Assembly (NCBI GenBank): GCA_021613535.1
Contig: CP075492.1
Coordinates: 4,836,001 to 4,900,000 of the forward strand
Direction: 5' to 3'
Origin: Adineta vaga
Lineage: Eukaryota; Animalia; Rotifera
DNA length: 64,000 bases
Part shown: one piece after another, positions 15,136 through 39,776 of the stretch
How the letters are laid out: the number at the start of each line of letters is the position of its first letter
How positions within the stretch are numbered: position 1 is the first letter of the stretch
The notes under the pieces: model-generated
What the model was told of the DNA's origin: nothing
What the model saw: only the letters and a program-made list of their open reading frames with translations
Databases searched by the model: none
Translations under genes and position numbers: made by a program

Positions 15136-18100
15136 ATGCATTTTATATCCAGGTAATTTATTTATTTATCTGTCAGTTGGTTGTGCATGAAGTCCCTGTT
15201 GAGGATAAGAGTGTGTATGGAGAATAGACCATCGTCTAGCTGTATTAACAATATAACCACAGGGGATGAGCGAATAAGGGAATAAGATAGATGAGCGTGT
15301 CACGTCACCTATATAAAAATCATTGTCCCTTGTTTTCTTTGGCTAGTTATTCATGGTTATTTGGTTTGGCCATTTGGTGTTGGTTTCATGTGGTTCTAAC
15401 CGATGGTAGAACAGTGATCACAATTGAATCGTCCAGCTCAGAAGAACATCGACCGTCGAGAAATGAAAGTATGTTACGTATTCGAGTTGTATACTATAGT
15501 ACTCGTTTCCTACCACATCGCTTTTTGAAAGGTCTTCTTTTTGAGACAAACTAACAAAATATGCTCACTTATTAGTGATGATATCTGAAATAGTCAATTT
15601 TCATTGACAACTCGATAACATATTTGAGAAGGCACAAAAGACGTAATTTTGCTTCGGAAGTTTATACAGACCTATACGGAATAAATGGAAGAAAGATTCG
15701 AACAATCTTTTTGTTTGTACCAGGTCGCATTTCCTCATTTTTGAGGTCATTAGTCTTTTTCTCCGATGTAATTCTAAACTAGTTACATTTAATATCTAAT
15801 CTTGAGACCTTTTTATAACTAAGTCTTAGCAGCAGCAATACGAAGTAGATGTCAAATCCGAATCAATCATATATGTGTATATAGCCAACGATAAAATACA
15901 TGCATGGTTCATTCTAGGATGTTCTTGTACCGATCATATGAAAAACCAAGATGAAACCGATGTAGATTGCGGTGGTTCCAAATGTCCGAAATGCGAAAAT
16001 ATGAAACGTTGTCGAGTTAGCTGTGATTGTCTCAGTACTATTTGCTACAATAATAAATGTGTCCGTAAGTATCGCATTTTTGTAGATTTACATCTTGTAA
16101 AAGTACTTTTATTGTAGCACCAGAATCATGTGTTGACAATATAAAGAATCAAGATGAAACTGATATCGATTGTGGCGGTCACATTTGTGCAAAATGTAAC
16201 GATACGAAAACTTGCTATATTCCGTATGATTGCATTAGTGGTGCCTGTGAGAATCATATGTGTATTAGTAAGTACTGTATGCTTTCCTCATTTTATATGC
16301 AATAAGGTCTTTCATCTCAGCACCTGAATCATGTACCGACAACATCAAGAATCAAGATGAAACTGACATTGATTGTGGTGGTCACATGTGCCCAAAATGT
16401 ATGGACACGAAAACATGTAGTCACTCGGACGACTGTCTCAGTGGCAATTGTGACAACAATATATGTGCTCGTAAATGCTGTATGATATCCTCATTACGTA
16501 AATAGCAAGATCTTTTATTTTAGCACCTGAAACATGTACCGACAACATGAAGAATCAAGATGAAAGTGATATTGATTGTGGTGGTCACATGTGCCCAAAA
16601 TGTATGGACACGAAAACATGTAGTCACTCGAATGACTGTCTCAGCGGCAATTGTGACAACAATATATGTGCTCGTAATTACTGTATGATTTTCTCAGTAT
16701 ATAAACAGCAAGATGTTTTATTTTAGCACCTGAAACATGTACCGACAGCATCAAGAATCAAGATGAAAGTGATATTGATTGTGGTGGTCTCATTTGTCAG
16801 AAATGTATGGATACGAAAACATGTAGTCACTCGGACGACTGTCTCAGTGGCAATTGTGACAACAATATATGTGCTCGTAAATGCTGTATGATTTTCTCAT
16901 TATGTAAACAGCAAGATCTTTTATTTTAGCACCTGAATCATGTACCGACAAGATGAAGAATCAAGATGAAAGTGATATTGATTGTGGTGGTCTTATTTGT
17001 CCAAAATGTATGGATGGGAAAATCTGCAATACTAGCAGTGATTGCGATAGCAATCAATGTGGTGCGAATGTTTGTCAAAGTATGTAATATATTATTACAG
17101 CTCAGAACGAATATGCTACGTTGAGTAACTTTTAACAGCAATGTACGTGTTGAGACTATAGTCGCATCTGAATCAGTTATTCGCAGCATCTTCACGAATT
17201 AAAAGTGCTATTTCTGTCAACGCTTGACTTTTCATGTTCGGATTGAAGCGATTATCATAGAAATGTTATATACTCGATATATGCAGCGTATAACGTGAAT
17301 AATATCTAAACTATAGAAAATTTGTATCTACTTTTACCACTACGACATTCAGACTTTCTTAAATGTTAGTTTAGTAGATGTGAGGCATTGATAGACGAGT
17401 TAAGTTGAAATCATGATTCTGAATAAAATCTCGTTCAAGTCTCGTTCAGTCGTAGAGAAGGAGAAGGGTTAGTATCATTGTTCGAAAGACATCTGATTCA
17501 TTCTTCATCGTTTTTCTTCAGCATGTTCGTTGAATGGTTTCAGTAATGGTGGATTCGAATCTGGCAATAGTAATGGATGGACTATCGGTGGTGGCGTACG
17601 AACTGGAGTATCATCATCTCAAATTCTACCGCAAGATTTTCTACCGAATGGTCCACTATATATAGCAAACATTGCCGCATCACATTCAGCAGTTGTTACA
17701 AACGATAGTGATCCACTCCTTGGCACATTGATGCCAGGCATTGTTCATAGTGGTCAAAACGCCTTCCGTATTGAAGACTTGATAAAAGGAGGCTATGCAT
17801 CGGTTATCAGTCGACAAATTAATAGCTACTTTTGTTTGGATATATATTTTGCATGGTTAGCTGTTGTAGAAAATGGTGATCATACTTCTAATGAGTCCAG
17901 TATTATGATAGTTGAATTGAAGGATACGACCAATAGTGACACTCTTATTTCGCGTCGTTACGATGCCGGAGCAGGCTCAACTGGTGTTGACAATCGCTTC
18001 CGACAGAAGGATGCATATTTCTATACACCATCTTGGCAAATAGAACACTTGGCTATTGGAAGCGATCGCATCGGTCATAACTTTACGTTAACTGTTCTAG

Positions 18101-18171
18101 CTGCAGATTGTAAACCAGCTGGTCATGTAGGTTACGTGTATATCGATAGTTTTAGTGGTATTGCACCGTAA
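15136..18171 (+). CDS. Secreted paralog: signal peptide, 6 Cys-rich ETDxDCGG repeats, bacterial-type beta-sandwich C-terminal domain
   Basis: Exons 15136-15152 (MHFISS), 15347-15468, 15918-16064, 16118-16267, 16321-16470, 16524-16673, 16727-16876, 16930-17079, 17522-18171 splice in frame; last exon reads NGGFESG..GWT ... LAADC...GH.GYVYIDSF. Confidence 0.85.
16118..17079 (+). repeat. Tandem array of 203-bp units (150-nt exon + 53-nt intron), 5 exon copies
   Basis: Exon starts CACC(A/T)GAA at 16118, 16321, 16524, 16727 and 16930, exactly 203 apart; the inner introns are also similar to each other. Confidence 0.95.
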
Positions 18172-18834
18172 CTTCATCTGATGTCATAGCAACTTTGCTT
18201 CAACTAAAAAGCTGAACATGATAACAATTCTCCCCATGTTTTCAAAGTTTTCGCATTTTTTTTAGTTTTACTATGTTCACATTTTTCGTCATAAAAATCC
18301 TTTAATCTTTTAATGATCTCAGTATCTTTTCAATTCGCAAAATTCACTGCTTGCTTAAATCTTCGAATTTCTCTTCCATTATTTAGTTTCTAATTCTACA
18401 GTTGTGTTTATTCAATAAAGTATTTCTTTTAGATTGTGTTTTATTATAGTATATGTGAATAATTTTGAATAAGTGAAAAAATATAGAGAGATGAATGTGA
18501 GATGAGTAATATTCCATATAAAAAGATGACTGTATACGTTTTTTTAACGAATATACTTAACATATTCGAATTTAGCGAGTTGACATACATTGGATCACAT
18601 AACGAATAGATTATAAGGCATCAAATTTTGATTTTGTTTTTCCTCAAAAGACAAAAGACAATACACACCTGATTTTACTTTCATCACGAAATGCTTATAC
18701 TTTCAAATAAACTCACCCATATTCATTATATTCAATTAGAAAAAAAATAGAAATTAAGATAAAGAAAAAGAAAACATTTTGAGCATGATACAGTTCACTT
18801 ATTGTTTACATATTTGAAAATAATAATTTGTTAT

Positions 18835-21800
18835 TCAAGTCTTACATGTATTCAATGTGATAGATGCTGTGTTAGAAAGTGTATTAATTGCAATCAAGTC
18901 GAGTCGTGTGTCGTTGTTAAAGTCACCTGCTAATAGAAAACTAGGATCACTGTCAGTTGTAATACTATCGATAGTGTCAAAGCTTCCATCACCATTACCA
19001 AGAAATAGACTCACAGTATTGTCAACATAATTGCTCACTGCTAAATCCGCAATACGTATCATTATTCAAATCATATGATATAATAGAATATGGACTGCTA
19101 CCAACAGAATAATTTCTAGAAACAGTAAAGGTTCCATCTACGTTCCCCAATAAAATACTAATACTGTCACTATTTTTATTGGCAATAGCTAGATCCAAAT
19201 AGTTATCAGTGTTGAAATAATTTGCCGTTATGAATGTTGGATAGGCACCAACTTTATAAGTCTGTTTCGCTGTGAATGTTGTATTACTTGAACCTAACCA
19301 TATAGTGATGGAACTGTTATCTCGATTAGCTACAATGAGATCTGGTATTTTATCTTGATTGAAATCGTTGGAAAGTAAAGCAGATGGTGAGCCTCCCACT
19401 GAGAAGTCCATAAAACGAGTAAAATATCCATTTCCTTTGCCTAATAATATAGTAACACTACTACCGGCTGTATTAGCTGTTGCAAGATCAAGAATATTAT
19501 CATTATTGAAATCTTTGGTTAAGATAAAATCAGGTTGAGTACCAGTTCGATACACTCGTGGTCCTTGGAAGATTCTATTTGCACTACCATATACCACGCC
19601 TACGGTTTTGGCATCTCTATTAACGATAGCAAGATCAGTTCTGTTGTCATTATTGAAATCATTTGCTATGATAGAATTAGGTGATTGACCAGTGGCATAT
19701 TCAGAATGAGTTTGAAAAGTACCATTTCCTAAGCCTATCAAAAAAGTGAATACATCATCGTCAAAATTGGTAACGACTAAATCAAGTTTTCCATCATAGT
19801 TGAAATCACCAGATGTAACAGATGTTGGAGAATTTCCAACTGGAAACAATAGTTGAGGTTTAAAAGAACCATTTGTATCGCTAAGTAAGATGCTAATCGT
19901 ATTATCACCATTATTAACAACAACCAAATCTTGATGACTATCATTGTTGAAATCGTTCGATGCAAGAAAATATGGGCGTGCACCAACTGTATAATTGACT
20001 ACATTCCGAAAAGAACCACTTCCATCACCAAACAAGATACTTATCGTTTTGTTCGCACGATTAGCCACAGCTAAATCTAAGTTGCTATCGGCATTGAAAT
20101 AATTTGATATTATGGAAGAAGGTTCATAACCAACAGTATATGGAATTGGTGGTATCTGAAATGTTCCATCACGATTACCAAGAAGAATACTAATGAAATT
20201 ACTGTCGCAACTTGTTACTGCTAGATCTAATTGTTTATCGTTATTGAAATCTTTCGATGTAATTGAGCAAGGACTAAACTCAATTGCATAAGGTTGGGAA
20301 ATGTTAAATGGCTCAGGAGGACGATTGAATGATACAAGAATTGAATTACTCTCTCGAATGGTTACTGCTACATCCGTAAAATTATCGTTATCAAAATCAC
20401 CTGTAACTAACGACGAAGGATTGAACCCAAGAGAATAGGAGAGTTTTTGTCCAAAAATTCCATTTTTCGTTCCTGGAAACATAGAAATACTTGCGGCACC
20501 AGCATTAGTCACCATAAGATCGAGATATGTATCATTATTGAAATAGCCTGATACGATAGATCGAGGAGAAGCATCAGTTTGATAAAATGCTAATTTAGAA
20601 GATGTTCCATTACCGAGACCCAGCAGAATACTAACAAGGCTGTTTCCATAATTTGTGACCGCGATATCTAATATTGTGTCGTTATTAAAATCAGCTGATA
20701 TGATAGAGGTTGGCCGAGTTCCAACTGGATATCTTGGATATGAAGGAAATGTTCCATTTGCAGTACCAAAAAGCAGATTAATCGAGTTACCACCATTGTT
20801 GACAACAATAAGATCTATGAAATTATCAGAATTGCATAGGCCTGCCACAACAGAGATTGGAAATTCACCAACATTATACGTAACGTCTGGCGCGAAAGTT
20901 CCATTTCCAAAATTAATCAGCATGCTAATTGTACCTTCGATATAGTTGACAACGGCTAGATCGGTACTATTATCATTGTTAAGATCTTTGGACACAATAT
21001 GATATGGACCAGTGCCAACATTATATTTTGTTTGATTTTGAAACGTACCATTTGTCATACCAAAAAATACACTAACAGTATTATCACCATAATTAGGTAC
21101 TGCAACATCCATGTAATTATCGTGATTGAAATCACCAGCTGTAATGGCATTAGCAGAAAAACCAGCAAAATAGTTTGCTATTAACCAAAAAGATCCATTT
21201 CCATAGCCATATAAGAAACTCACGATGCCATACAAACTATTCACTGCTACTAAATCTATATGTGTATCATTGTTGAAATCATATGCCACCAAACCTACGA
21301 AATTTTCATAGGCAGGAATATTTAATTGTATGCCAAACGATCCGTTTCCAGAGCCAATTAATATACGTATGAAAGGTTCTTCGGATTGGACCACTGCCAA
21401 ATCAATTATTGTATCATTATTGAAATCAGCAGAAACGACCGCTGTTGGTGTGGCTCCAACAAGAGTTATTTCCTGTTCGTGGAAAGTTCCAAATCCATAC
21501 CCAAGTAATACGCTAATTGAATTACTATCTTGATTAACAACTGCTAAATCTGGTATAGTGTCAGAATTAAAATAATCTGCTATTATATAGACTGGATTTG
21601 AACCAACCGAATAAGCTGTTGATCGTTGAAATGTTCCATCGCCAGTACTAAGCATCACTTCGATAACACCATCTTGTTGACTACATATTACTAGATCGTT
21701 CTTTTTATCGTTGTTTAAATCATAGAGTAGTGCATAACTGGGTTGAGTTCTTGTCAGAATAGTGGCTTGAGTTTCAAAATTTCCCTTTCCATCGTTTAGC

Positions 21801-23389
21801 AAGAGAACTGCATCACTGTCTTGTTGATTCAACACCATGACATCCAAGTCTTTGTCATTATCAAAATCACCTAATGTTGCAGAGATAGGACTACGGCCAA
21901 CAACAAATGATTTTTTGCCGCTTGTAAAAGGTGTTTTACATCGTTGTACTATAAAAGAAAACAAATACACAATCAAAGCTGACTAAACATATCGATCTTT
22001 ACATAGAGCTCAGATACGTACTTCCATTATTATTGTTATTTGCTCTAGATTTTATTCCTAAAACAACACCAGTAATAACACCTACAATCGCCAAGGTTAC
22101 CAATAAACAAACTGGAATAGAATATTTTTTCTTATAATACCAAGGTTTTCTAATAAATATAATAAATGAGAAACGCAATATAACGTAAAAAGACCTACTT
22201 GAGCTTTGGAAACACATGTGCACCTATAAGTAGAGACAATAAATAAGATTGTGATGAAAAATGAAATGATATCAACGATATAGATATGTATACCTTCAAA
22301 TGGTGGTTGAAGTAGAGCTTCTTCAGGAATAACTTGTTTCAAATGAACAATATGAAGTTGAGGTGCTGGACTAAAGAGTGATTGAACTATCATATGTGTA
22401 CCAGGAAGAAGAAGAAGTTCATCTTCTGTAACGAAATGCGAATGTGCACGAACTGTTCGACCATTGATTGCTTCAACTGAAAATAAAGTTCGACTTCCAC
22501 TATTACCCAAATACATATTATTTTCCAATACAGTTAATTCTGTCGTACAAGATGAAAATGCCCACCAAGTGACAGGTGTTCCAGGTGGAAATTCTTGACT
22601 CAAATCTTTCGTCACACCTCGCCAAACAGTTAATGGTGGAACACATGGTAATTTGACAAGAGCAGTGATGAATAATTTCATATATTTGAAATAAGGTCGA
22701 AGTTTTTCACGAGGTTGAGTTTTAAGAGTATAATTAAGCATGGAATAAAGACTTCGATGTGGTTTATCCCATTCGATCGTATATAAACGAATAGCAGCAC
22801 TTTCATCAACAGTAAGATTATCAGGTGGTTCTGGAGGTGTTTCTTGTAGTGCGAGTTCGACATAGAATGTTAGATTATGTAGTATATCATCGAGAGGAGC
22901 ACAGGCTTCAGCAAGTGGTAAGATGGGTTCATCAGCATATTCGATGAGAGGTTCTGTTGGTTCGATTTCTTCCGAAGTAGTATTAGTAGCTGTCTGATTT
23001 TGTTGTTTAAGATCATCCGGTTCTATCGTTCTTTCACCTTCATTCCTCAACTCGCTAATCGTATTGTCTCTACCTTGTGTTAGTGATGTTTCTGTGCCAA
23101 ATTCATTTTCAGTAAGTTTATCTTTATCATTGAAATTTTGATATGGTATATTTGCTGTATACGGTGGATCATTAATGATCTTGATTGATGTCCTCTTAGG
23201 ATTTCGATGATACTGCATTGCTTCATTCCCAACGCCAATAGATGTTAATTCCGTTTGTATGCGAACATTTTTGCTAGGGGGTGCTCGTTGATATTGTCTA
23301 AGTTCATAACTAAGTGGGATAGCTGTTTGTTGAGTTTGTATACGAGCATTTTTCATCATAACTCTTTCCTTCTGTTCTTGATAATTCAT
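18835..23389 (-). CDS. Type II membrane protein: cytoplasmic R-S-E ADP-ribosyltransferase, TM helix, 21 extracellular FG-GAP/VCBS repeats (1-nt frameshift at ~19054)
   Basis: Exons 23389-22294, 22223-22199, 22149-22022, 21948-18835; ART motifs TVWRGV, WAFSSCT, EDELLL; TM IPVCLLVTLAIVGVITGVVLGI; 21 DFNNDxxxDL-type repeats counted. Confidence 0.9.
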
Positions 23390-24444
23390 CGTGTTCTTGT
23401 AGTTTTATCGATGAGTATTATTGATTTTCACGAGATCTAAAAGAAATCCGCTATTGATTATAATACATGGTTATCTAATCGTTCTGTACGATATTCATTG
23501 TTCTATTAGAAGAATATCAAATATGTAATGATACATGACACGAGTTATACTCAGAGAACATTATCTACTTGAAACGATTATGCGTATCAAGAGATGATGA
23601 AATATCGATGATGTAAAAGTTAAAAGTAGATATTTTCCTGTGAAAAACTACATTATGAATTCGTCATCGATCAGTGTTAACATTCATGCCGATGTATATA
23701 ATATATAATATGTGTTGATGAAGAAATTAGTACTTTCACATAACTAAGAGATGTTTTCTTATCATCATCGAGAGGAACAAATAATGAATGTATATGTATG
23801 AAAAAAGAAGTGCGTACGTACCGGCGAATATCGATGGTGAAATGAATCGATACCTGTATTCAGTAGTAAATAATGAAAATAAACTGAAAGGTTACATCGA
23901 ACTAACATAAATGCACAGTTTTGTATATGTTCTTTCTTTACATTTGACGAGCAGCCATGCATAGAAATATTTTGTTTATTTGCGTAGAATATATAATATG
24001 AAATCAAAAAAAAAAGAAAAACAATTTGTTATTCATATCGTTGATAGATGATATATATACGCCATACCCGTCAATGAGTTGGAACGCACGCTTTTTTTTC
24101 TTATTCAAAATATTTACCATAACGAAGTCATTTACAGATAAGAAATATAATTACTAATTTATTTATTCAGTCTACAGCAATTGATAAAATATCTATCGTC
24201 CTTTCATATGTAAACAGAATAAGCAGAAAATATAAAGGTGTAATTATCTATACAGGTAGTCAGAATTTGAAGTAAAAGTATAGAGAGCAAAACGACATCT
24301 GACACAAATCGAAAATTGGAACGAGATAGATTGAGGGTGGTGACCATTTCAGTTGATATATTCTGATATTTATTGAAATTGAGAACATAAAATATATATT
24401 CTTTTTTTCAAAGACATGGAAAATATAAATTCACAATTTTTTTT

Positions 24445-26766: not shown

Positions 26767-29700
26767 TTAATGAATAGAATCCTTCAACAAAATCTCATTA
26801 TTGTCCAATACTAATGGTTCGTGAGAAAAGAAAACCGACGTAATGTTCCGCCGTGATTTTCGATTACATTCGTCTTGTACTCCATTCCAAAGAAATTTTA
26901 ATGGAGTGTTCGATTCGGGACGAGTTTCTAACGCTTTTCGTGGTTGAACATTGCTGGAAAAAGGAGAAGGAGTAAATATAGCTGTTATATTAACCTTCAG
27001 CCGTGCTCCCGATGCTTTCATCGATCGTCGTTTGTAGTCCTGACAAAATTTCTCGAATGAATTTTTGTTCTGCTCCATACGTTTGGAAAACTCTGCTTTG
27101 TATTCTTGTAGTTGCTCTTTCGAATAGGAACAGCGAGATGAATATTGTTTCTTATTCTTCTTTTTCTTTTGATGATCTTCTTCAGAATCGTCATCCTTGC
27201 TTTTCTTTTGATAATTTTCTTTGGAATCTTTATCTTTTTTCTTCATGTCAATTCCAGAGATGAAAACAGCATCAGAATGGATTGATTCATCATGTTTCAT
27301 TGTTTCTTCCTTCTTAATTGTTTTTCTCAATTTCGATTCGTTATCAGTAGAAGTTTTTCGACTACTATTTGGTGATAAATCAACCATTGGAGAATATGAT
27401 CCAACATCTGCTGATAGATAAGTTTTTTGTACGACGATATCAAGAATTGGAAATGGTGCATCGTTAATATCACCTGTATATGTAAATGGAGGAATATTCT
27501 TTTTGGTCGGGTTGAGCATTATTCTATTAATCCATTGCTTTAACAATAATACGTCAGTGTCGCAGATTTGGAAAAGAGTGACGACTTTTTGTTCATGATC
27601 GAAATCGGTAGTATGACCTAAAGTATTACGAGATATAGATACGACTTTCTCGATTGTAACAAAGGAAAAAATCAATTGACTATATCAAGGAATTGGACAA
27701 ATCTTTCATTACAAATCTTTTCTTACGTGAGTTATTATTATCAGGCATAGCAACACTCTTTTTGTCGTCGTCTTTTTCCTTATCAAGATATTCTCTATCT
27801 TTAATCATATTATGAACTTGTTTGATAAGAATTTGTCTCTCGTCATCTTTAATTCTTCCACTCTTCGAATTGATCAATTTCTTCACTAGTTCATCATAAA
27901 TCAATTTGCGTTGTTTTGATGTTAGGAGAAAATGCAATTGAACAGAGTCTCCTTTCCACTGGGTTGATTTTAACGACGAAGTAGAACTACATTTGATATT
28001 CTGGAACTAAAAAAAAGGAATGAATGATTAAGTGACAATGATCAGATATTCAAAAGTAGTGACTTACAATTTTCAACAATAATTTATCGAATTGTAAATT
28101 GAAATTATCTTGCGATCCAAAGAATGGTAAACAAATCTGCTGTTCAGTTATTTTCCGCAATAATCTGATTGGTTGACAGTATTCTACTTTGATCGGAATG
28201 ATATTTTTCTGTTTTTCATAAGCATATTTAGCTTCCTCTATACAATTTCGATCGTTGAAATAATTCGTACTCAAACATAGAATGAACAAATCCGATCGAT
28301 CAATTTTTGGAAAGCTGTTTTCGGACGAATCTGATCTCATCCAAACGAAAAACCCTTCATTTGTTAGACATGTTCGTAATTGTTGACAGATAGCAGCATC
28401 ATCTATAGCATAACTCAACACTATTTTGAAACTGTTTGGAATACTTTTCAATGCATTTTGATCTATAGATAACCGCATTTGCACTAAGGCATCAGTGAGT
28501 TCATATTTTTGATAAGCTTGATTCACATTAGCAATAGGCCCAAATAAAACAAGCTGTTGTTGATCATTTAGTTGTGGTAGAACCGATATTTCACGACAAT
28601 ATGAATAGAATCCATTGATTACATCTTGATTCCATTCATTGCACTTGCTGGACAACACTTGTCTACACATTGATCTTTCGAAATAGTGTTTGATTTTCTT
28701 GTCGCATTGCGTAAGGTGTTTCTTGTTTGTTGCAGTAAGAGTAATCGTTGCAACTATAGTAAGAACAAGCTCTCGACCTTATAGAAATGAATTGCTATCT
28801 TACTTGACGTTGGGCAATAGAAATTTCCGTAAGTTCTATCGTTGGTTTGAAGAGTTTGAACAATATCAATAAACTGCTTGTATAACTTTTGTTGATCTGC
28901 TAAGAAAATAAATGATACATTGAGTAAGATAGTTGTTGTTTGTCGAATTTGTTCGATAGTTTCATCAACCATCTCTTCTGCAATGATTTGATCGTGTTGA
29001 CATGAATCTGGCATTGCAATTGCAATGGATAACGTTTGACGATCGGATCGTCTTTCATTTTTGAGCACATATTGAATGATCTTAGATATAAAGAATCGAA
29101 CTGATTCGCTTAGAAAATCTTCATCGGCTAATTTTCCTGGCATTGACCAATTGACAAATAGCATTTTCTTGCAATTCAATCTTCCAGCTGTTGTCTCAGT
29201 AATAAATGGCATTGAATTGTCATGATGAGTTCTCGTATGTTTTGATCGTTGTTCTTCAAGATCACCTGCTCGTTCGATTAAATATTCTTTCAATCCTGAC
29301 GACAATGATGGAATTATGATAATGTCAACCTATAGAATTAGCATTAGAAATAAGAAACTTAGTAGAAAAAAATGGGCTTACTTGTTGCTCAGCGATGTCT
29401 CCAGAAGAAACAGCAATAGATCCATTGGATAACTTGGCTTCGCAAGAAAAAAATGGTAGAGAATTAGGTGAATTCATCATGAGCGGAACAAGTGCAAGAT
29501 CATCTTTTTGTTTGCATAGAATTGGAAAAGGTTTATATTTTCTCGTGAGTTTAAATTTACAATAACAATGATTATCTTTAGCTAGATGTTGTATGTAAGA
29601 AATTGTTTTCTCAGCAATATTATAATAAAATTCAGTTGTATCAATGGTAAGTTTTTTGAAACTTGATAGTAAAGTTTTCAGTTTTAATTGAACATCATTT

Positions 29701-31376
29701 AAGAGATATTGTGGCGCATGAAATTCCTGTTTTTTCAAATCGATTTTGACACCGTCTTTACGCAAGTTATTTTCAATTTTTCCCACTGCTTTCCAACCAA
29801 TCTGGATCAAACAATCGATCTAAATAGATAATACCATGTAAGTCCATCAATGCAATTAAAACTATCCGAATGTGTCATGTATTTTTAAAAGAGAAACTTA
29901 TCGATAAATTGAAACTTACTTGTGTTGATGAAAGTTGAGTGAATTTATATTTGTATAATCGATATTTTTTGAATAAATGTTCAATTTTTGTTAACAATGG
30001 ATTGACCACATTTTTATGTCCAAGTATATCAATAATAGTTTGATCGCTCTTTCTAGTGGATATGTTTTCAGTAATCGATATAAATGAACTATTTCGTTGT
30101 TGAGACTGGATGATTTCATCGAATTCCTTTCGATATTGATTTACAGCATAGATTTTCTCCTTCTGAATAATTTGACATGTATCTAGATCCATATATTCAA
30201 CTAAAAGAAATTCATCCGTCACAGAAATGAATAATTTCTCCTGCACAATCTGATGTTCAATAATATTATCAATTTCAATAGCTTGATGAGAATTATTGAA
30301 TTTATCATCATTGAAATGGACGATTTCTAACGTTGGTGCAGATGTCTCATACTAAAAGATAAGTTCTTACTAGAACATAATGTCACAATTATACCGTTGC
30401 TTTTGGCAGTGTATTTGATCGACATATTATGAACATATGACTATCACGATCGATGATTTTTTGTATAATGCCAACAGCTGATGTATTGGAAAACCATTGT
30501 TTTACTGAAATACAAAGTATAGATGACAAATAATGCCTGTTTGCTCTTTCTACCTTTTCGTTGTTTGTATTTGCGAATTTGTACTTTTTTAAATAACTTT
30601 TCGATAAAATTTATAATCGTCTGATATTGTTTTTCTGTACCAGTCAGTTTGAGAGTATACTTTAGTGAAGACCACTCATCATCAGATGTTGTCTGATCAA
30701 TCTCAATCCGAATAGGACCTCTTTCTCTATCGACATAGTCAATAAAATATGAACGAAACTTTTGATTTTGAAGAAATTGAACAAGATTATCGTCATCGAT
30801 AGTATATTTGTACTGACGTTTGACAGTTACTAAATCATCTGTCTTAGTTTTCGTCGAATTATTTGTTTCGTGATGTCTTTTCTAGAAGAGATTAACAATT
30901 TGAGTGTATGAATATCGATCAAATGATTACAAAACAGTAATACTTACATGTAGGTTACTAGGATTCTCAGATCTTGATCGTCGTTTGTGATGATTACTAA
31001 CGATTTCTGATGAAATTCTAGCACGGTCATCCGCGTATTGTGACGATATACTCGAATTTACGTCAACTTCTTCAACAAGGACTCTTCTCAAATCGATGAG
31101 TTTTTCTCGAAATCGACTTTGAGTTCCAATCGTAGGTTTTCGAATCGTCCCATCATCCTGTAACTCAGAGAGTACCTTTGCAATATCTTCATCGTTCAAT
31201 GCTACCAGAGCATTACCGTCGATGTTTAATTCTATAAAGTTCAGTTATAATAAAGATTAAAAGACAAAGTTAACATAATTAAAAAACATAGATTTACTTT
31301 TAAACCTTTTAATATATCTCTTAAATCCATTCGCTTTCAGCCAATGACTAACTTGGTCTACATTCCACTTTGTCAT
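26767..31376 (-). CDS. Multi-exon SAM - KH-like - Macro - TIR - unknown C-terminal domain protein (gene C)
   Basis: SAM: MTKWNVDQVSHWLKANGFKRYI...NIDGNALVALNDEDI; Macro: SIAVSSGDIAEQQVDIIII...TTAGRLNCKKMLFVNW...SIAIAMP; TIR: IVLSY...SDLFILCLSTNYFNDRNCIEEAKYA...IIPIKV; the exon joins I checked are in frame. KH-like call is inference. Confidence 0.85.
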
Positions 31377-32689
31377 GATTGATCACGTAAAATAAACCTT
31401 TGGAGCAATCTGAAATCGACGAAATCTCACGACTATCTTAGAGTTTTTGCGAACGAGGTTAAGTAAATGCAACTGCACATATAGCTATGTGTCAATTCCA
31501 CATCTGCATTCTCACCCAACTACAACTTCATGATTTATTTACATTTATGACGCCAATACTTACAACCAACAATTATTCTACAAACATATCTCCGAAATGT
31601 TTTTTCCAACTTACCCATGTTTGATGTTTTTCTGTTCTAACGTACCTGGCATTGTTGATTGACGATTATTATTCCTTTCTTTTTTTTGGTGGATCAAAAA
31701 TAAAAAGTTTGTATGTTTGACTGCAACCAACACATTCTCACTACTGCGTAATACATTATTAGTGACTTATTTTATCCGGATAAATCAGCTATGTTCTTGT
31801 GTGAATTTCAGTTCTCGTCAATCTCCATAGATCTTATCGGCAACTCACATTTTCTCCTTCTATTTTTTAATGTTTGTACAGACATGAAAACCCTCAGAAT
31901 CAACTCTAGATTGAAAACTTTATTGATAAAGCAACCGGTATGTTATTGTGTTATTGTGTTATTGCTTATTTATTAGGATTCACTATAAAAATAATTGATG
32001 TGCTCATGGAGTAACTTAACTATATAAATCTGGAAAACAATCATTTGATAAGAATATTTTATTCTTCAATTTCTTTTTAGAACATATAAATGAACTATTG
32101 ATCAACAGAAATATAACACTTACTTGATCAGTTAAAGGTGACTATACTTTCTTTTCTATTATTTATTTCGCGAGCAAATGCTTATGAGAGGCAAAAATTT
32201 CTTCTTTTCTCTTTTAAAACATTTTTTTCACGACTTTCTGTTGCAAGATTTATTCAGAGAAAAGGAAATGTAAATAGTTATAAAATGAAGAAAAATACAT
32301 ATTCGTATGTAAATATTTTTATGTTTCAGAGTAACAGCGACGAGTATTACGCACAATAAATCAGTGGTTTTATTAGCATGACTCTTTCACAATATAATCC
32401 ATAGATTTTTGTAAGTCTAGACGTTATAAAAGAAATGGAATAACATACAGAACGACTGACTCTTCTGTCAAATTCTTTATACATTCTTCCTTACTTTTTA
32501 AGGATCTGAATACTATCGTTTCTAAGGGCCTTGTCGAGTCCATTTCGAGGAAACTTCAGACTAGTGAAATTAGTCAGAAATATCTGATCGAAGAGCAATG
32601 TGATTATTGACATAGAATAAATTTTTCATCTGTGTTTGCCTTCACATAGTTATAGTCTGATCAATGTTGTTCATAATCCCAGATATCAT

Positions 32690-32717
32690 TCTTCTTCTTC
32701 TTATTATTATTATTATT
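32690..32717. repeat. (TTC)n(TTA)n trinucleotide microsatellite just before an AG acceptor
   Basis: TTCTTCTTCTTCTTATTATTATTATTATTCAG, ending 8 nt before ATG 32729. Confidence 0.7.
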
Positions 32718-32728
32718 CAGATTTATCA

Positions 32729-35700
32729 ATGGCAAATTGGACTTTGAAACAAATCATTGAATGGTTGCAAATAAATGGTTTTGAAAAGCATATACAAACG
32801 TTTATAGGTAAGCAATTGATTCATTGAATGTGTGTGCTGCAAGTATATGCATGATCTTTTATGCCATAGATGAAGATATTGATGGAGCAGCACTCATGGG
32901 TTTACGCGACGATGATATTATAAAACTACTTGCTGTGGTGGATCAAAAAGGAGTACGAACAAATCCGACGATGAGAACACTACGAAAGTTTTTGGCCAAA
33001 CTAGAAGAATTGAAGATATTGGGGAACAAAGAACAAAAGAGAGAAAGAAGACGCAGCGGGTAAGTGAATTTATTCTGTCCAAAAGTTTTTCAGACTGTGA
33101 TATTCTAGTGCACTTCATTCATCCATGATGACTGTTAAGCCTATTGGTCATACAGTTAATGATTCAAAATCACATTCTCAAATATTTATTGTTCAACCGA
33201 GAAGCTCGCAAATTAAATTTTTCCAAAGTGAATTGATCTGTAACTATTTACAGGAGTATTTATCGACAAATTTTGATGTGACATGCAACATACCTATGAC
33301 AATTCTGTCCATATCAAATACTGACTTGTTAGTACGATTGTCCGGTCATAAACAAGAGGTGCAAGCTGCTCATCAAAATCTTCAATCATTATTTGCTACA
33401 TTACATACCACAATTTTGAATGAAAACAATGCGAGTCCAAAAGGTTAGTAGTTCATTGTATATAGAAGAAAAACAATAAATACATTTCGTTTAATAATAT
33501 CTCTTTAGTAATCAAATGGTCAAAGAACATCCATTGTGACTTAGCTCTTCTTGTACTTCAGAAAATCTTTATTGATAAGAAGTTATGCACTGTTTGGGAG
33601 AAAACAAGTGTGTTGTCTGGATACTATATTGTTCATTATCTAACTGGTAATCATGATCCCAGTGCCTCGGAAGAATTTATCAACCATGTATTAAATCATG
33701 ATATATCCTTCGTCAAAGATATCACTGTATCGAATGCTCACAAAAGATACCATAGCGAATTGGATGAATTTATCCAAAACAAGAAGAATGCTTCACAACA
33801 AAATCAATCCATGGCTGTAATTTCCTTACAATATCCGTCTCAAAAGGACTTCAAAATTAGTCTTTTTGGTTTGAAAGATATTGTTCAAGTTACAAAAAAA
33901 CAATTAAAATTACTAATCAATAAACATCAGATGAAAACGACAAAACTCAATCTGGATTCAAAACAGGTAAGAACTGCATATTCTCTAGATGTCATCTCGA
34001 TAAATAATATTGTTTTAATTTTAGCGTGAATATCTATTGGACAATTGTACCTCTCATTTGAGAAATATTGAATTGAATTATGAAGATGATAATGTTAAAA
34101 TTCAAATTCGTGAAAGTTTATTTACTTCACCTCAATATCTCGTAAAAATAATTGAACAGCTGATTCTATCGATGATTTTCCAAACAGTGAATTTAACTTT
34201 CAAATCGATCGAAAATGCATTTCTATTGACAGACAGTGATCGTTTACAATTAGAAACTCTTGCTAAAAACTGCAATTGTGAAATAAACCACATCGAAGTA
34301 AAAACAGAAGAAGAATCTATCATAATACCTAAAGGAAACATTCCTGCAACACCTGAACATCTCGCAAAAGACTCAAATCAAGTTTCTGCTACATTATTTG
34401 TGCCAAAATAGTATCTATATCGAACAACACACTAGAAATTCGAAAGACTGATCAATTAAAGGTTTGCTTTTTCTACTAAACCATTACATTCCACGAGGGA
34501 TTTCATTTGATTGATTTTAGACTGATATCATAGTACTATCAACAGAAGATGATTGCATTCGAGAGAAAATTGAATCTAAGAATCAAGTTGGATATTATCA
34601 AACCAATACTGGTAAAAATTTTCTTTATATACCATGGTCACCAACACAATTCAAACAATATGACGATCGACCAAAATCTATTCTAAAAGAATCAATAAAA
34701 CAGTTCATATCTCACTCATTAACACAATTAATTCAACATAGTGATGCGAATGTAAAAACAGTGGCATATTCAACAACGAAATGGGAGAATTATCCACATC
34801 GACAACAATTTATCCAAATATTTATTCGCCAAATGAAATTACAATTGGAATCTGAACTGTTTGCGAATCGTGGCTGGAGAATTATACTTCCTTTCCATCA
34901 AAAACAATGTTTCTTATTTAAAATGTTTTCAGACATCCTATCAAAATCAAAAACTCAAAATAATAGTGATGAACAATTCTCATGTCCAATATCGAGTAAG
35001 TATAGAGATAAAGGCATCGTTTGTTTTATGTCTATTCGTTGCTTTCTAGTAAACACACTTGCACTAAAAACCTCGAGCGATAATAATATTGTCAAATGCC
35101 AAAAAGTCATCAGCAATTATATCGAGACAAATGTTTTCATAACAGTGAAAATTGATAAACCATTTGATTTACATATTTGGAATCAATTTATGATTAACGA
35201 TTATTACAATTACTGTTTACAAGAAATGATCTTACCCAATTTCTTTCAAACAAACTCACAACCGCAGTATCTGGAACTAGCTGGTCCAGTAAAAAAAGTT
35301 CATATAGCAAAAGAAAAGTATGAACTAATGTCTCAAATTGCTCATCTGAAAAGAATACCTGCAAATCTCGTACCTATCAAAGATCATCAATCGTCGAAAG
35401 TTACGCTGAAAACATCCAAAGAAATATCAAATCAATACAATATTCTCATAAGTTATTGCTCTTTAGATGGAACATTGCCTCTGATTCTTGCTGATCATTT
35501 TACTGATGAAGATTATATTGTATTAACTGAAGCTTCCGATCAAACATCTTCGTCTCATATTGCAAGCATAAATAGAGCAGATGTTATTGTCATTTGCTTT
35601 AGTTCAAATTATTTCATGAATGCGAATTGTAGAACTTCACTACGAACAGCAATCGAATCCTCGCAGAAAACAATCATACCTGTTGTTCTTCTAGCAAATT

Positions 35701-37248
35701 CATCAGATCAACCGATCAATTGGCTTGAATGGATTGATGTACAAGAATTATATTATGAAATATTTCACGAAGAAATTAAATTTAAACTTAACACAAATTT
35801 TGATCTTAATTATGAAAGATTATTAATTGAATTGGTAAGCTGAGCAGTTTCTTAAGTATTCATTATTATAGGATAAGAATTGAAAGGCAGCATTATTTTC
35901 ATTTCCACAGATTCGCACTCATTCTCTTTACTAATTAGAGCTTTCTATTTATAGCTTCAATATACTAAACCAGGTGTATTTGGTCATAAATATCCAAAAT
36001 CTAGTAATACTTCCGTCGAAGAATCTACGCAAAATGAAGATGCTCATCATCACGATAAAACTATCGAATTAACAGCAGTAGAAATGCAAACGAAAAGACG
36101 AATCTATGAAGAGCGTATTCAGAAAATTGTTCAAAGCCAAAAAATTTCAGAAAAGGAAATGAAACAACTGATTCGTAGTTTAGAAGTTGTATTGAAATCA
36201 TCGTCAAGTCAAGAAAGTTCAGATACATCGGAAGAAGAAAATTCAATAATATCCAGTGAAATTTCTGAACAGTCTGAAAATAATATGAACGAAAGAAATA
36301 AACAAGGTCAGTAATTAAAATTCCATTATGAGAGAAAAATATTATAGATATCATGAAGACAGATGACAAGAAGATGATAGATTTTTATGAGTTAGATACT
36401 TTAGAAAAAATGGTAGAAGTATCCTGAGTGCTTTATATGAACTTCTCAGATGTATTTATCGTAGTGTTTTATTGTATTTGTTTTCAGAAGAATTAAACAT
36501 TTGTTCTGAGTACTTGCATGCTTTCTTCTTATTGATACAACGTTGGATGGAAGAAGCATCAAATAAAACAATGATTCGGGGTAATTTACCACCATTTACT
36601 TTGTCTGGAGATTATAATGATGCTATATTTCCACTCCCATTATCGAATAAACTTCCCTGGTGGGACGTAGAAGATAGTATTCAGAATATTTATCGCTCAA
36701 AATTAAAAGAACTTGAGCTATTTCCAGAAGTGAAAATGATTGGAGGATGGTTTAATTGTGATGAAGCACATTTTTACTTTGAAAAATTAATTGATCCTGA
36801 TATGCAATTTCGAGAAGAAAGGAAAGATATAGATGAAACAACATCTGATGAAGGAAAAAACAACATAATATCTAGAACTTATATGAAATTTAATACGTCC
36901 GTACAGAGACATATCTCAGTTTGGGATCGTGATCAAGATGTCGAACTCTTAAAAGAATACAGAAGACGTTTAAATAACTCGAAAACGGATTTACCTGACG
37001 ATCTTCTAGAAAGATGGGATCATTATTGGTCTACAAACGCACAGCTTATACGAGATATGGTATGGGGAAAAGTTGAAGCTCAATCAAGATCTAGAGAAGA
37101 ATGTCGAAAACTTGAAATGCTGGATGATCCAAACAATGAACTGTGGAAAAAGAAAAAAAGAAACCGTGGATGTCGAAAATTTGTTAAACAGAAAATACGA
37201 AATACGATTGAATGGCAAAAATTCTTAGACGTACAAAAAGATGACTAA
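32729..37248 (+). CDS. Divergent paralog SAM - KH-like - degenerate Macro - TIR(E to S) - unknown C-terminal domain (gene D), apparent frameshift at ~34408
   Basis: SAM: MANWTLKQIIEWLQINGFEKHIQTF...DIDGAALMGLRDDDI; TIR: ILISYC...INRADVIVICFSSNYFMNANCRTSL...IIPVVL; shares NLPPFT.SGD.NDA.FP with gene C; junctions at 36.3-36.5 kb not resolved. Confidence 0.8.
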
Positions 37249-37386
37249 AAACAAGTTAATCAAGTTGACCATTGTATCTCGAATATTCTTTTTTCAATAA
37301 ATTGCCAATTCTACTTCTATAATTGTATAACTTTGATTCCACATTCTTATAAGACATTTCTATTTTTAGATAAATCAATTCTTTAC

Positions 37387-39776
37387 ATGACTGCTTTACT
37401 TCAAACATCTAAAAATGGTTCAATTACAGGTTTACTCGAACTATTCGATGATGTTGTTTCATTTCTCGATAATAATACTTACGAATCAACGCTTGGCTTA
37501 CACAAACTAACCGCTATTTGTAATAAATTCATTGGCATTCATGCCTTGGATCTATTTGATAATCCACTAATTATGAAACATAGACTTTTCTTCTTACTCA
37601 GTCGAACATTCAGCATGTTGTTATCAAAAATGATATTGGTTCCATTGACATCGGTCGATCAGGAATGTTTAGATGCAATTAGCTCATTTGTTGCTAATCT
37701 GTGTTTGTACAAGAATAAAACCATTGATTGTTTCTATACAGGTTTTAACGAAGAACTTAATCCAGAATCATATGAACAAATCTTTTTTACTAAACATTTC
37801 ATAGACAAATTTATTCGAATGGTAGAACATGATATTTCCGTCCATGATTATCCATCACCATATGATATTAAATACAAAATAACTGATCGTTTACTTCGTC
37901 TCTGGATGAAATTACAACATATGAATTACAAATGTATTCTTGATGCAGTAGTTAATTGTTTGATGTCGAGTAGTTATCTGAATGCATATGAAAGTATTGA
38001 TCTTCATAATCCAATATTAACCCCAAAACAATCATTATTTCTGTATCAATGTCCGAAATTTATTCGTCTGATGTCTTATGAACGGCAGGAAGCTATATCA
38101 CATATATTATGTGAAAAGATTTTAAGCGATACCAATGTCATACTTCGAAAGTACTTACCTGTTATTTTAGGACGTGAATCAAAACTAGTGCGAGAGACTA
38201 ATAAGAAGCCAAAAGAAAAAGTATTTACATGCATACCAGCTGGATTGTTTGACGATGAAAGAGGAGCAAAAATGCCTGCTATTGCTTGGAATATAGAATT
38301 ATTAAATTATTTTGCTTTGACATCAACAATAGCCATACGAAGTTGTTTTTATACAAGTATGTAATGATGTCAGTTAATCCTGATAAGAATAAAACAGATT
38401 TATATATTTTTTCGCTTAGATCATGATCGCAATGAGACAATGGTTGATCAAATGCTTGCTCTAATAAGTGAAGAATCTTTAATTAAAAGTGTTAAAGTAC
38501 ATGTTCTATCGTTCCATGCCGATGTTGCTCTTATGTCATATTCACTTGTACTGTTATATAATTTGGTATTTGACGAAACAATACATCGACATATAAAAGA
38601 CAAAAAACCATTTGATGCTCTCAAAGAACTTTATGTAGCGAAAGATAAAGTAATCCAATTTACATCACGCACATTAGCTGCAATTTTAAGAAAAGACAAA
38701 ATCGATAAAATTGATAATCCAGCGAAAATTGCAAAATCCTATTTATATTTGATCGAGAATACTCTTGAAGATCCATCATTGATATTTCATGGAATTAAAT
38801 TGGATGGAGTATTAACCAATTTGGAAAGTAAGTTATTATACACTTATATTTCATTATAGTAAGTATCATACGATAGTTGCGATATTTGAATGAGAAAACT
38901 TCAGTGGAGTGTATAAATAAACAGACCATTGTGACTAGAAAGAGTAACTTTGTTCCTTTTATTTTAGCTGTTGTTCAAAATGATGACGTGAAAGAAGAAA
39001 TTGTCAACGAAGATGGTATCAATTTGATAGGAGATATTGCATATCGTGAAGATCTAGATGAGAAAACCATACGTGATCCTACTATTCGAATTATTGAAGG
39101 TCTCTCGTTCGCAAAGGAAGGATATAAAAAAATTCTTGAAAATGAACGCTTATCAGCTTATTTGGATACATTGTTGCACGATAGAGATGCTGAGAAGAGA
39201 TCAATAGCAAAATATATCAATTGGAATGTTAAAGATCAGAATACTTTTATAAAAGACAAAACTTGCGAAACAGAATCTGGGCGAGCAGAAAACATACGAC
39301 CAAAAAACCTATTTGACATTAACAAAGCCATTTATCAATACGTTCCAGGTGATTACAAGTTTCGTTTGGATGATGAAAAAAGGTGGAAAAAAATCAATAT
39401 TCGAATTAGTTGTAGTCAACAAGATCAAAAGATATGCAATGATATTTACAATAAATTGATGGAATCCGACTTATACAACGTATCGTTCGATACATCCAAC
39501 TCACAACGTCCAGATCCTGAAGTACTGGCCAATGAAGTTGAACGTTCCTCTGTCGTTATTATATGTGCGTCAAATACATATCAAAATTCGTATCCATGCC
39601 GAATAGAAGCTGTTTATGCTAAGAAGAGAAATCGAAAAATTATTGCGGTTAAGTTCAATGACTATATTCCTTCAAAATGGTTAACTCGTATTATAGAAGA
39701 AGAACCTATTGTGTTTACACCCTCAAAATTTAATGAGGCATGGGCTCAATTACATGATACAATCAATAAAGAATAA
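37387..39776 (+). CDS. ARM-repeat-like solenoid + C-terminal TIR protein (gene E)
   Basis: Exons 37387-38356, 38420-38827, 38968-39776 in frame; helical ARM-like segments (LVLLYNLVF, VKEEIVNEDGINLI); TIR: IRISCSQQDQKIC...VERSSVVIICASNTYQNSYPCRIEAVYA...IIAVKF. Confidence 0.85.

What the first reader, a model, noticed from the sequence alone, without database searches (positions are those of the whole stretch)
26767..37248. Divergent active/dead TIR pair resembling plant paired NLRs
Seen: paralogs with ATGs 1.35 kb apart (31376 and 32729) and matching early intron positions. Gene C has NCIEEA and GDI. Gene D has NCRTSL (Ser at 35637-35639) and no GDI, yet keeps long open exons despite very deep divergence. 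Known: head-to-head sensor/executor pairs such as RRS1/RPS4 share a promoter. Inference: D is an inhibitor or decoy partner of executor C.
Basis: partly seen in the sequence, partly recalled or inferred. Interest (0 to 1): 0.85.

Follow-up and report, generated by a model that had tools for sequence, protein, structure and literature searches.

The report
Paired live and dead TIR genes
Two back-to-back genes of the rotifer Adineta vaga encode look-alike SAM-macro-TIR proteins: one keeps the key enzyme residue, and the other has lost it yet is still transcribed and conserved, which suggests an untested enzyme plus non-enzyme partnership.

Summary
Gene C (minus strand, 31376 to 26767) and gene D (plus strand, 32729 to 37248) of Adineta vaga are full-length paralogues. 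Their start codons lie 1,353 bp apart, and both have a 79-nt first exon. C has Glu at the TIR catalytic position (NCIEEA) and a macro domain with GDI. D has Ser there (TCA, 35637-35639) and a degenerate macro domain.

- It is fully transcribed and spliced in runs from three studies.
- It is under purifying selection (pN/pS 0.14; omega 0.32 between two A. ricciae copies, against 0.39 for C).
- None of the 22 representatives of its subclade, from Adineta and Rotaria, has Glu.

The head-to-head pairing recurs four times in this genome and also in A. ricciae and Rotaria.

The "executor plus inhibitor/decoy, like paired NLRs" reading is only partly supported. These are not NLRs, I found no decoy domain, and I have no evidence of binding. 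Sister modules include a Glu/Glu pair and a pair in which neither has Glu, so the pairing is older than the loss of Glu and does not depend on it.

Most likely D is a non-catalytic partner subunit. First readers of this scan had already flagged two paralogous pairs elsewhere on this chromosome, and a follow-up report covered one of them.

The parts
26767..31376 (-). Gene C: SAM, three small alpha/beta middle domains, macro, linker domain, TIR and a K/D/E-rich tail; about 10 exons
   Evidence: Collinear with the A. ricciae orthologue P0062 over aa 1-1312. The C-terminal 813 aa equal the annotated protein P0043. The exon 1-exon 2 junction is seen in three RNA-like runs.
31298..31376 (-). C exon 1 (79 nt, start of the SAM domain); intron 1 is 31232-31297
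   Evidence: The loose ends of RNA contigs at 31298 carry the exon 2 sequence; the intron is GT..AG.
28805..29417 (-). C macro domain, with an intron at 29327-29378
   Evidence: AF2 model of P0043:1-445 (pLDDT 76.7). Its best Foldseek matches are macroH2A and PARP9/14/15 macro domains (E 8e-8, prob 1.0, TMt up to 0.70). Pfam finds no Macro family by sequence.
29394..29402 (-). GDI motif at the start of the C macro domain
   Evidence: The motif is GDI in the other three C-type rows and ADI in the two A. ricciae rows, and it is absent from all D-type rows.
28068..28430 (-). C TIR domain
   Evidence: Pfam TIR_2: 55.1 bits against a cut-off of 28, E 1.4e-14.
28233..28235 (-). C catalytic-position Glu (GAA; E382 of P0043) in NCIEEA
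31377..32728 (.). Divergent intergenic region (1,352 bp), presumed to hold both promoters
   Evidence: No transcript contigs lie here except one short piece in X12. No block is conserved with A. ricciae or with pair 2. The loose ends at 32215/32216 point to a structural variant between haplotypes or strains.
32729..37248 (+). Gene D, 9 exons: 32729-32807, 32870-33059, 33109-33443, 33509-33966, 34025-34461, 34521-34995, 35050-35834, 35955-36306, 36488-37248. Architecture: SAM, middle domains, degenerate macro, linker, Glu-less TIR and a D-specific tail.
   Evidence: One 3,939-nt transcript contig (X10) spans all eight introns. Seven of them show as GT..AG joints; intron 2 (33060-33108) I read from the sequence around a nearby SNP. 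Five of the joints are seen in all three RNA-like runs and none in DNA run X1.
34404..34404 (+). Site where the window lacks one A compared with every read set (an A-run); without that A the frame breaks
   Evidence: 'Put in behind A' at full depth in X10, X12, X14 and DNA run X1. With the A the CDS has no stop; without it, 53 stops.
34429..34994 (+). D macro-like domain, with an intron at 34462-34520. It has TDQ in place of GDI and lacks 18 residues of the GL.E..IERAG loop.
   Evidence: Alignment A2. The AF2 model of the A. ricciae orthologue P0104:471-925 (pLDDT 76.3) matches PARP9 macro 2 (prob 1.0, TMt about 0.52).
35436..35834 (+). D TIR domain
   Evidence: Pfam TIR_2: 37.4 bits against a cut-off of 28, E 4.2e-9.
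35637..35639 (+). Ser855 (TCA) at the catalytic-Glu position, in NCRTSL
36488..37245 (+). D-specific C-terminal region. It shares only the ~40-aa PPFT.[ST]GD.NDA.FP motif with C.
   Evidence: 35% identical to the D2 and R. socialis D tails over about 270 aa. No Pfam hit and no usable Atlas hit.
39393..39764 (+). Context: TIR domain of the next gene downstream of D (ARM-TIR type, starting near 37333). It keeps Glu (CRIEA).
   Evidence: A TIR_2 gene follows D in A. ricciae, R. socialis, R. sordida, Rotaria sp. Silwood2 and R. magnacalcarata.

Best explanation
C and D are an old, divergently transcribed paralogue pair specific to bdelloid rotifers. Both encode N-terminal SAM, middle domains, a macro fold, a linker domain and a TIR domain.

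C keeps the macro GDI/ERAG segment and the TIR catalytic Glu. It is therefore predicted (not shown) to be an NAD+-cleaving TIR enzyme whose macro domain binds an ADP-ribose-type ligand.

D lost the macro ligand-binding segment early in its history. In the lineage that includes this gene, it also lost the catalytic Glu. It is nevertheless transcribed, correctly spliced and under purifying selection, so it has a function that does not need TIR catalysis.

The most likely function (inferred) is that of a non-catalytic subunit that co-assembles with C through the SAM and/or TIR domains and tunes or scaffolds its output. It may also do so with the Glu-bearing ARM-TIR gene next door. All this would take place inside a conserved NAD+/ADP-ribose gene module. 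Whether D inhibits, senses or co-activates is not determined.
For: **Paralogy and conserved pairing.**
- Four head-to-head C/D pairs exist in A. vaga.
- The same arrangement is found in two A. ricciae loci, in R. socialis, in R. sordida and Rotaria sp. Silwood2 and in R. magnacalcarata.
- Adineta and Rotaria belong to different bdelloid orders.
- C and D form two clades, each with 99% SH-aLRT support.

**Catalytic column.**
- The column aligns with the WCxxEL Glu of Cat1.
- All four A. vaga C copies have Glu. D1, D2 and D3 have S, A and V, and D4 is truncated.
- Glu counts by clade: D-gamma 0 of 22, C clade 20 of 24.

**D is functional.**
- A full-length spliced transcript is present in runs from three studies, and none of its joints appear in the DNA run.
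- Variants are 16 synonymous to 9 non-synonymous: pN/pS 0.14, binomial p 2e-6.
- Between the two A. ricciae copies, omega is 0.32 for D (TIR 0.29, macro 0.17) and 0.39 for C.

**Macro folds and the D-type deletion:**

**Precedents.**
- TIRs without the Glu are inactive and may act as sensors or hetero-oligomeric regulators, as RRS1 does (PMC12452931).
- Macro domains receive TIR products in type II Thoeris (PMC11204291 and bioRxiv 10.1101/2024.01.03.573942; titles and abstracts only).
Against: - No test here shows that C and D touch each other.
- Glu status is not fixed across sister modules: Glu/Glu in R. sordida and neither in R. magnacalcarata. D4 is truncated in A. vaga. The partnership, if real, therefore does not rest on an active/dead split.
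- No NADase activity has been measured for C.
- The C macro domain lacks the canonical glycine-rich loops and no Pfam Macro model detects it, so ligand binding is uncertain.
- Adjacency could persist through shared regulation alone.
- The intergenic region diverges at about the synonymous rate (89.9% identity between the A. ricciae copies, against dS of 0.12-0.145) and shows no conserved blocks.
Confidence: 0.45

Rival explanations
1. D is an independent, MyD88-like scaffold or adaptor TIR protein with its own pathway. The head-to-head arrangement is a legacy of an inverted duplication, kept because the genes share a bidirectional regulatory region. No C-D complex forms.
For: - Most animal TIR proteins are non-catalytic adaptors, and the best PDB sequence-profile matches of the family are MyD88 TIR domains.
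- D has its own conserved C-terminal region that C lacks.
- Pairs in which both or neither partner has Glu exist.
Against: The pairing has survived at least three module duplications and the split between bdelloid orders. That is more than expected for mere neighbours, especially as the intergenic DNA itself is not conserved.
Confidence: 0.28
2. One reading: D is an inhibitor or decoy that holds the executor C in check, as RRS1 does for RPS4.
For: The genomic geometry and Glu status match. PMC12452931 notes that non-enzymatic TIRs can act as sensors like RRS1 or regulate TIR complexes.
Against: - Neither gene has NB-ARC or LRR domains.
- I recognised no integrated decoy domain. D is collinear with C except for a tail of unknown fold.
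- Pairs exist in which D keeps Glu or C lacks it.
- Nothing here shows that C is toxic or autoactive.
Confidence: 0.15
3. D still carries out chemistry through other residues or another TIR activity, so it is not a dead enzyme.
For: TIR domains have several reported products and activities (PMC12452931). The D TIR is as constrained as the rest of the protein (omega 0.29).
Against: - The catalytic column varies freely within the D-gamma subclade (S, A, V, N, Q, H, Y).
- No acidic residue is conserved nearby in the helix.
- None of the 15 Arabidopsis TIRs lacking the Glu was active (PMC12452931).
Confidence: 0.07
4. D is a decaying duplicate (pseudogene) whose open frames are a coincidence.
For: The window as assembled has a frame break at 34404, and the public gene model P0001 skips two stretches.
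Against: - All read sets restore the frame.
- The full spliced transcript has no stop over 1,290 codons.
- pN/pS is 0.14 and omega is 0.32.
- Intact orthologues of about 1,300 aa exist in five or more species.
Confidence: 0.02

Closest known systems
Arabidopsis RPS4/RRS1 (and other head-to-head paired TIR-NLRs)
   Same: Two paralogous TIR genes are divergently transcribed and co-inherited. One has the catalytic Glu. The other lacks it but is retained and functional. PMC12452931 describes non-enzymatic TIRs as possible sensors like RRS1 or as regulators by hetero-oligomerisation.
   Different: There is no NB-ARC, no LRR and no recognised integrated decoy. The architecture here is SAM-macro-TIR, the lineage is an animal one, and the active/dead split is not constant among sister modules. 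TIR-TIR heterodimerisation is untested.
SARM1 / TIR-1 (animal SAM-TIR NADase)
   Same: It is an animal protein that combines SAM with a Glu-bearing TIR domain. Oligomerisation driven by SAM is the accepted route to TIR activation (my own knowledge; PMC12452931 uses the SARM1 SAM domains to drive TIR activation).
   Different: Here there is a single N-terminal SAM and no ARM domain. A macro fold and other domains lie between SAM and TIR. The gene comes as a pair with a Glu-less paralogue. No PDB sequence match to SARM1 was listed.
Type II Thoeris (TIR signal producer plus macro-domain receiver)
   Same: A TIR domain and a macro domain occur in one functional unit, and the macro domain is the receiver of an ADP-ribose-derived TIR product (PMC11204291; bioRxiv 10.1101/2024.01.03.573942, titles and abstracts only).
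   Different: Thoeris is bacterial and its two domains lie on separate proteins. Here they are fused in one animal protein, and ligand binding by the rotifer macro domain is unproven.
PARP9/PARP14/macroH2A-type macro domains
   Same: These are the best structural matches of the C macro domain (Foldseek E 8e-8 to 1e-6) and of the D orthologue.
   Different: Sequence identity is only 10-20%. No Pfam Macro model hits. The glycine-rich phosphate-binding loops are not recognisable, and D additionally lacks GDI and 18 loop residues.
MyD88-type adaptor TIR domains
   Same: These are the top sequence-profile matches in the PDB (E about 1e-4), and they have no Glu at the catalytic column, as in D.
   Different: There is no death domain, and the pairing with a Glu-bearing paralogue is not a MyD88 feature.

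Membership tests
TIR domain (Pfam PF13676 TIR_2) | Score above the Pfam gathering threshold | tested here: met
   C scores 55.1 bits and D 37.4 bits against a cut-off of 28. The orthologues P0062 and P0104 score 52.8 and 34.1 bits.
NAD+-cleaving TIR enzymes | Catalytic Glu in the helix after strand C (WCxxE-type motif), in gene C | tested here: met
   NCIEEA; the profile column aligns with the Glu of the Cat1 WCWDEL motif. Glu is present in 20 of 24 C-clade representatives.
NAD+-cleaving TIR enzymes | Catalytic Glu, in gene D | tested here: not met
   Ser855 (TCA, 35637-35639). None of the 22 D-gamma representatives has Glu.
NAD+-cleaving TIR enzymes | Measured NADase or cyclase activity | not testable with these tools
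   This needs a recombinant protein assay.
Macro domain | Macro fold | tested here: met
   C model: macroH2A, PARP9/14/15 and bacterial macro domains, prob 1.0, TMt 0.55-0.70. D-orthologue model: PARP9 macro 2 and others, prob 1.0, TMt about 0.5.
Macro domain | Sequence membership (Pfam Macro models) and canonical ADP-ribose-binding loops | tested here: not met
   No Macro family was found at E <= 1 for the window's macro exons, nor at E <= 0.05 for P0043, P0001 and the orthologues. C keeps GDI but not the NAAN or GGG-type loops. D lacks GDI and has an 18-residue deletion.
Plant paired NLRs (RPS4/RRS1 type) | NB-ARC and LRR domains | tested here: not met
   Pfam finds only SAM and TIR_2 in the C and D proteins and their orthologues.
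Plant paired NLRs (RPS4/RRS1 type) | Head-to-head arrangement conserved across species | tested here: met
   A. vaga four times, A. ricciae twice, R. socialis, R. sordida, Rotaria sp. Silwood2 and R. magnacalcarata.
Plant paired NLRs (RPS4/RRS1 type) | Integrated decoy domain in the sensor partner | tested here: inconclusive
   D is collinear with C up to the PPFT motif. Its roughly 200-aa D-specific tail has no Pfam or Atlas match, so its nature is unknown.
Plant paired NLRs (RPS4/RRS1 type) | Physical heteromer of the two partners | not testable with these tools
   This needs co-IP or structural work.
SARM1 family | ARM, tandem SAM and C-terminal TIR architecture | tested here: not met
   There is a single N-terminal SAM, no ARM domain, and a macro fold before the TIR.

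The most novel reading that the evidence does not exclude
C and D form an obligate hetero-oligomeric NAD+/ADP-ribose signalling switch. D is a conserved double pseudo-domain subunit, with a ligand-blind macro domain and a Glu-less TIR, and it gates or templates the TIR enzyme of C (and perhaps of the adjacent ARM-TIR). This would be an animal counterpart of plant sensor/executor TIR pairs that also uses a Thoeris-like macro receiver, arisen independently in bdelloid rotifers.
Probability: 0.25. Interest if true: 0.8.

Novelty: new variant of a known kind. Interest (0 to 1): 0.55.

Why it matters
Enzymatic TIR signalling is well worked out in plants and bacteria. In animals it is known mainly from SARM1.

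This locus is a family found so far almost only in bdelloid rotifers, and it fuses SAM, a macro fold and a TIR domain. It has been inherited as a divergent pair for a very long time. One partner has repeatedly given up catalysis while staying under selection.

If the two proteins work together, this would be an independent animal origin of the catalytic/pseudo-catalytic TIR pairing seen in plant immune receptors. It would also offer a tractable system of two genes, two domains and clear point mutants for asking how dead TIR domains control live ones.

The natural variation among sister modules (Glu/Glu, Glu/none, none/none) amounts to a ready-made mutant series.

Tried and rejected
- **Single-exon PDB searches.** They gave nothing useful; a family profile was needed.
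- **Complex prediction.** I ran complex prediction on C linker+TIR (P0043:205-445) with D exon 7 (window:35052-35834). The result was "no answer", which counts neither for nor against binding.
- **Shared promoter.** No intergenic block is conserved between A. vaga and A. ricciae, or between pair 1 and pair 2.
- **Atlas search of the D-specific tail.** No usable hit.
- **Literature searches.** I found no paper on this family.
- **P0103.** It was not on record; I recovered its locus through P0123.
- **Pseudogene reading.** Rejected.
- **Membership in the NLRs or the SARM1 family.** Rejected.
- **Fixed active/dead rule.** Rejected after the R. sordida and R. magnacalcarata modules.
- **C-type TIR motif in Rotaria sp. 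Silwood2 (L040).** It has a 2-residue gap, so I could not call its catalytic column.
- I redid it by reference.
- **dN/dS between A. vaga and A. ricciae.** Not attempted, because synonymous sites are likely to be saturated at 52% protein identity.

Full report
**What the window is.** The window is chromosome-scale contig 3 (positions 4,836,001-4,900,000) of a six-contig, 100.8-Mb genome. Gene D's public model is "hypothetical protein I4U23_012164 [Adineta vaga]" on a contig of the same length. The region is 31% G+C with short introns.

**The observation.**
- Gene C runs on the minus strand from ATG 31376 to the stop at 26767. Gene D runs on the plus strand from ATG 32729 to 37248. The start codons are 1,353 bp apart.
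- Both genes carry a Pfam TIR_2 domain above threshold (C 55.1 bits, D 37.4 bits), and the orthologues of both carry an N-terminal SAM domain.
- The genes are collinear paralogues from residue 1 to a shared PPFT.[ST]GD.NDA.FP motif. Their A. ricciae orthologues are 23% identical over 1,205 columns, and the TIR exons in the window are 29% identical.
- Exon 1 is 79 nt in both, so the first intron sits at the same position and phase.
- A profile of the seven A. vaga TIR regions aligns this column with the Glu of the WCWDEL motif of the TIR NADase Cat1. MyD88, which is not an enzyme, has Gln at the same column.

**The "GDI".**
- In C the string marks the start of a domain that AlphaFold2 models (pLDDT 76.7). 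Foldseek places that model among macro domains: macroH2A, PARP9/14/15 and bacterial ones (E 8e-8, prob 1.0).
- No Pfam Macro model detects it by sequence.
- In the alignment, no D-type sequence has GDI, and all lack 18 residues of the following GL.E..IERAG loop. A model of the A. ricciae D orthologue still matches macro folds, but more weakly.
- D is therefore degenerate in two domains, not one.

**Is D alive?**
- Contigs of three RNA-like runs from three studies lie on D. One 3,939-nt contig spans all eight introns, and seven of them show as GT..AG joints. Five joints are seen in all three RNA-like runs, and none appears in a DNA run.
- Intron 2 is 33060-33108. I worked it out from the sequence around a nearby synonymous SNP.
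- All four runs, DNA included, have one more A after 34404 than the window. With it the transcript-defined CDS is 3,873 nt (1,290 codons) with no stop; without it the frame breaks. This is most simply a homopolymer error, or a strain difference, in the assembly.
- The discrepancy explains why the public model P0001 skips 16 residues there. P0001 also wrongly removes 33 residues before the TIR.
- Of the 25 best-supported differences between the runs and the window inside the CDS, 16 are synonymous and 9 are not. That gives pN/pS 0.14 and a binomial p of 2e-6 against the neutral 20:80 expectation. The tool listed only the best-supported sites.
- A. ricciae carries two diverged copies of the whole locus (L036 and L037). 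Between them D has dN 0.046, dS 0.145 and omega 0.32 (TIR 0.29, macro-like 0.17). C has dN 0.047, dS 0.120 and omega 0.39.
- D is thus at least as constrained as C.
- The exon 1-exon 2 junction of C is present in the same three runs.

**Is the pairing conserved?** Within A. vaga there are four head-to-head C/D pairs:
- the window pair;
- C3:4.254-4.264 Mb;
- C3:14.262-14.272 Mb (the whole locus inverted);
- C1:11.445-11.451 Mb, where D is truncated after the start of the macro domain.

In other species:
- In A. ricciae, the C orthologue P0062 (Glu; NCIDEA) lies 852 bp from the D orthologue P0104 (Val), head to head. The second locus is the same.
- In Rotaria socialis, from another bdelloid order, a C-type gene (LCEQEA) faces a D-type gene (NCTKAL).
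- In each of these other species a further TIR_2 gene follows D. In the window that gene keeps Glu.

A tree of 63 linker+TIR regions splits into a C clade (24 rows) and a D clade (39 rows), each with 99% support. The C/D duplication therefore predates the duplications of the pair. Apart from one weak TIR-only hit from amphioxus, every named relative I looked up is from a bdelloid. Only 102 proteins among 1.84 billion representatives match at E <= 0.001.

**Glu status across the family.**
- All four A. vaga C copies have Glu. D1, D2 and D3 have Ser, Ala and Val.
- The D subclade that holds D1 and D2 (I call it gamma; 22 representatives from Adineta and Rotaria) has no Glu at all. It carries S, A, V, N, Q, H or Y there. 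That free variation is what an unconstrained former active-site residue looks like.
- Two other D subclades keep Glu in 12 of 17 representatives.
- The C clade has three small Glu-less lineages. The minimum number of Glu/non-Glu changes on the tree is five.
- In the Rotaria sordida module both partners have Glu. In a R. magnacalcarata module neither does: C has Thr and D has Gln.
- The pairing is therefore older than the loss of Glu and does not depend on it. What is constant is the geometry, an intact GDI-type macro in C against a degenerate macro in D, and the neighbouring TIR gene.

**Mechanism.**
- Shown: paralogy, conserved divergent pairing, transcription and splicing of D, purifying selection on D, loss of the catalytic-column Glu in D and its subclade, and macro folds in both with a D-specific deletion.
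- Inferred: C is an NAD+-consuming TIR enzyme regulated by its macro and SAM domains. D is a non-catalytic subunit that co-assembles with C and modulates it.
- The inference rests on published precedent. TIRs without the Glu are inactive, and non-enzymatic TIRs may serve as sensors like RRS1 or regulate TIR complexes by hetero-oligomerisation (PMC12452931). Macro domains receive TIR products in type II Thoeris (PMC11204291; bioRxiv 10.1101/2024.01.03.573942, titles and abstracts only).
- I put this at 0.45.

**Comparison with known systems.**
- The pair works like plant paired TIR receptors only in geometry and Glu status. It is not an NLR: there is no NB-ARC and no LRR.
- It is not SARM1-like in architecture either.
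- Its macro domain is a structural member of that fold, not a sequence-level one.

**Limits.**
- The joined spliced models of C and D were built only inside local scripts, for translation and for counting codon changes. They were not sent to any search or folding tool. Searches used exon references or database protein ids.
- Splice junctions of C other than intron 1 come from homology and from the partial public model P0043, not from reads.
- The D structure model is of the A. ricciae orthologue.
- The tree is a quick search with SH-aLRT support only.
- All runs laid were Logan contigs, so no expression level can be stated.

**Earlier notes of this scan.** First readers independently flagged the paralogous pairs at C3:4.26 Mb (s1-498481) and C3:14.26 Mb (s1-498508) in the same terms. 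A follow-up on the 4.26-Mb locus (s1-498418) described a conserved four-gene TIR/ART module. My own searches found these loci independently and agree with those notes.

Noticed in passing
window 34404: The assembly has one A fewer in an A-run than all four read sets, DNA included. This breaks the frame of gene D and distorts the public model I4U23_012164 (P0001). That model also wrongly splices out 33 residues at 34996-35150.
   Followed up: yes
window 26767-31376: The only public protein I recovered for gene C (P0043, 813 aa) starts in the middle of the gene. Homology with the A. ricciae orthologue and the exon 1-2 junction in RNA contigs indicate a protein of about 1,300 aa with an N-terminal SAM domain.
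   Followed up: partly
window 32215-32216: Contigs of DNA run X1 and of X12 end here with long unrelated tails. This suggests an insertion/deletion or haplotype difference inside the C-D intergenic region.
   Followed up: no
window 37333-39764: The next gene downstream of D is an ARM-TIR-type gene that keeps the catalytic Glu (CRIEA, TIR at 39393-39764). A TIR_2 gene follows D in every other species I examined. It may be the catalytic member of the module.
   Followed up: partly
L031+L029+L030 (G000:C1:11445676-11451355): This is a fourth C/D pair in A. vaga. The D copy matches Rotaria sordida P0013 over residues 1-472 and then stops, so it has lost the rest of the macro domain and the TIR. 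The C copy is intact and has Glu.
   Followed up: partly
L041 (Rotaria magnacalcarata, GCA_965140935.1), 2310-15199: A head-to-head pair in which neither partner has Glu at the catalytic column (C-type Thr, D-type Gln), although the C-type keeps the macro GDI. A PPR/DYW-deaminase gene lies next to it at 17774-23891.
   Followed up: partly
L038 (Rotaria sordida) 5967-7115: A beta-lactamase-family gene (PF00144) is called about 3 kb upstream of the D-type gene, where the C-D intergenic region should lie. No C-type match was found in the 10 kb upstream within L038. In L039, from another R. sordida assembly, the C-type gene lies about 4 kb upstream and no such gene is called.
   Followed up: no
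window 36488-37245: D has a conserved C-terminal region of about 250 aa (WW..., GGWF..DEAH, DDPNN..W motifs). It is absent from C and has no Pfam or Atlas match. C instead has a K/D/E-rich tail that is conserved among C-types.
   Followed up: partly
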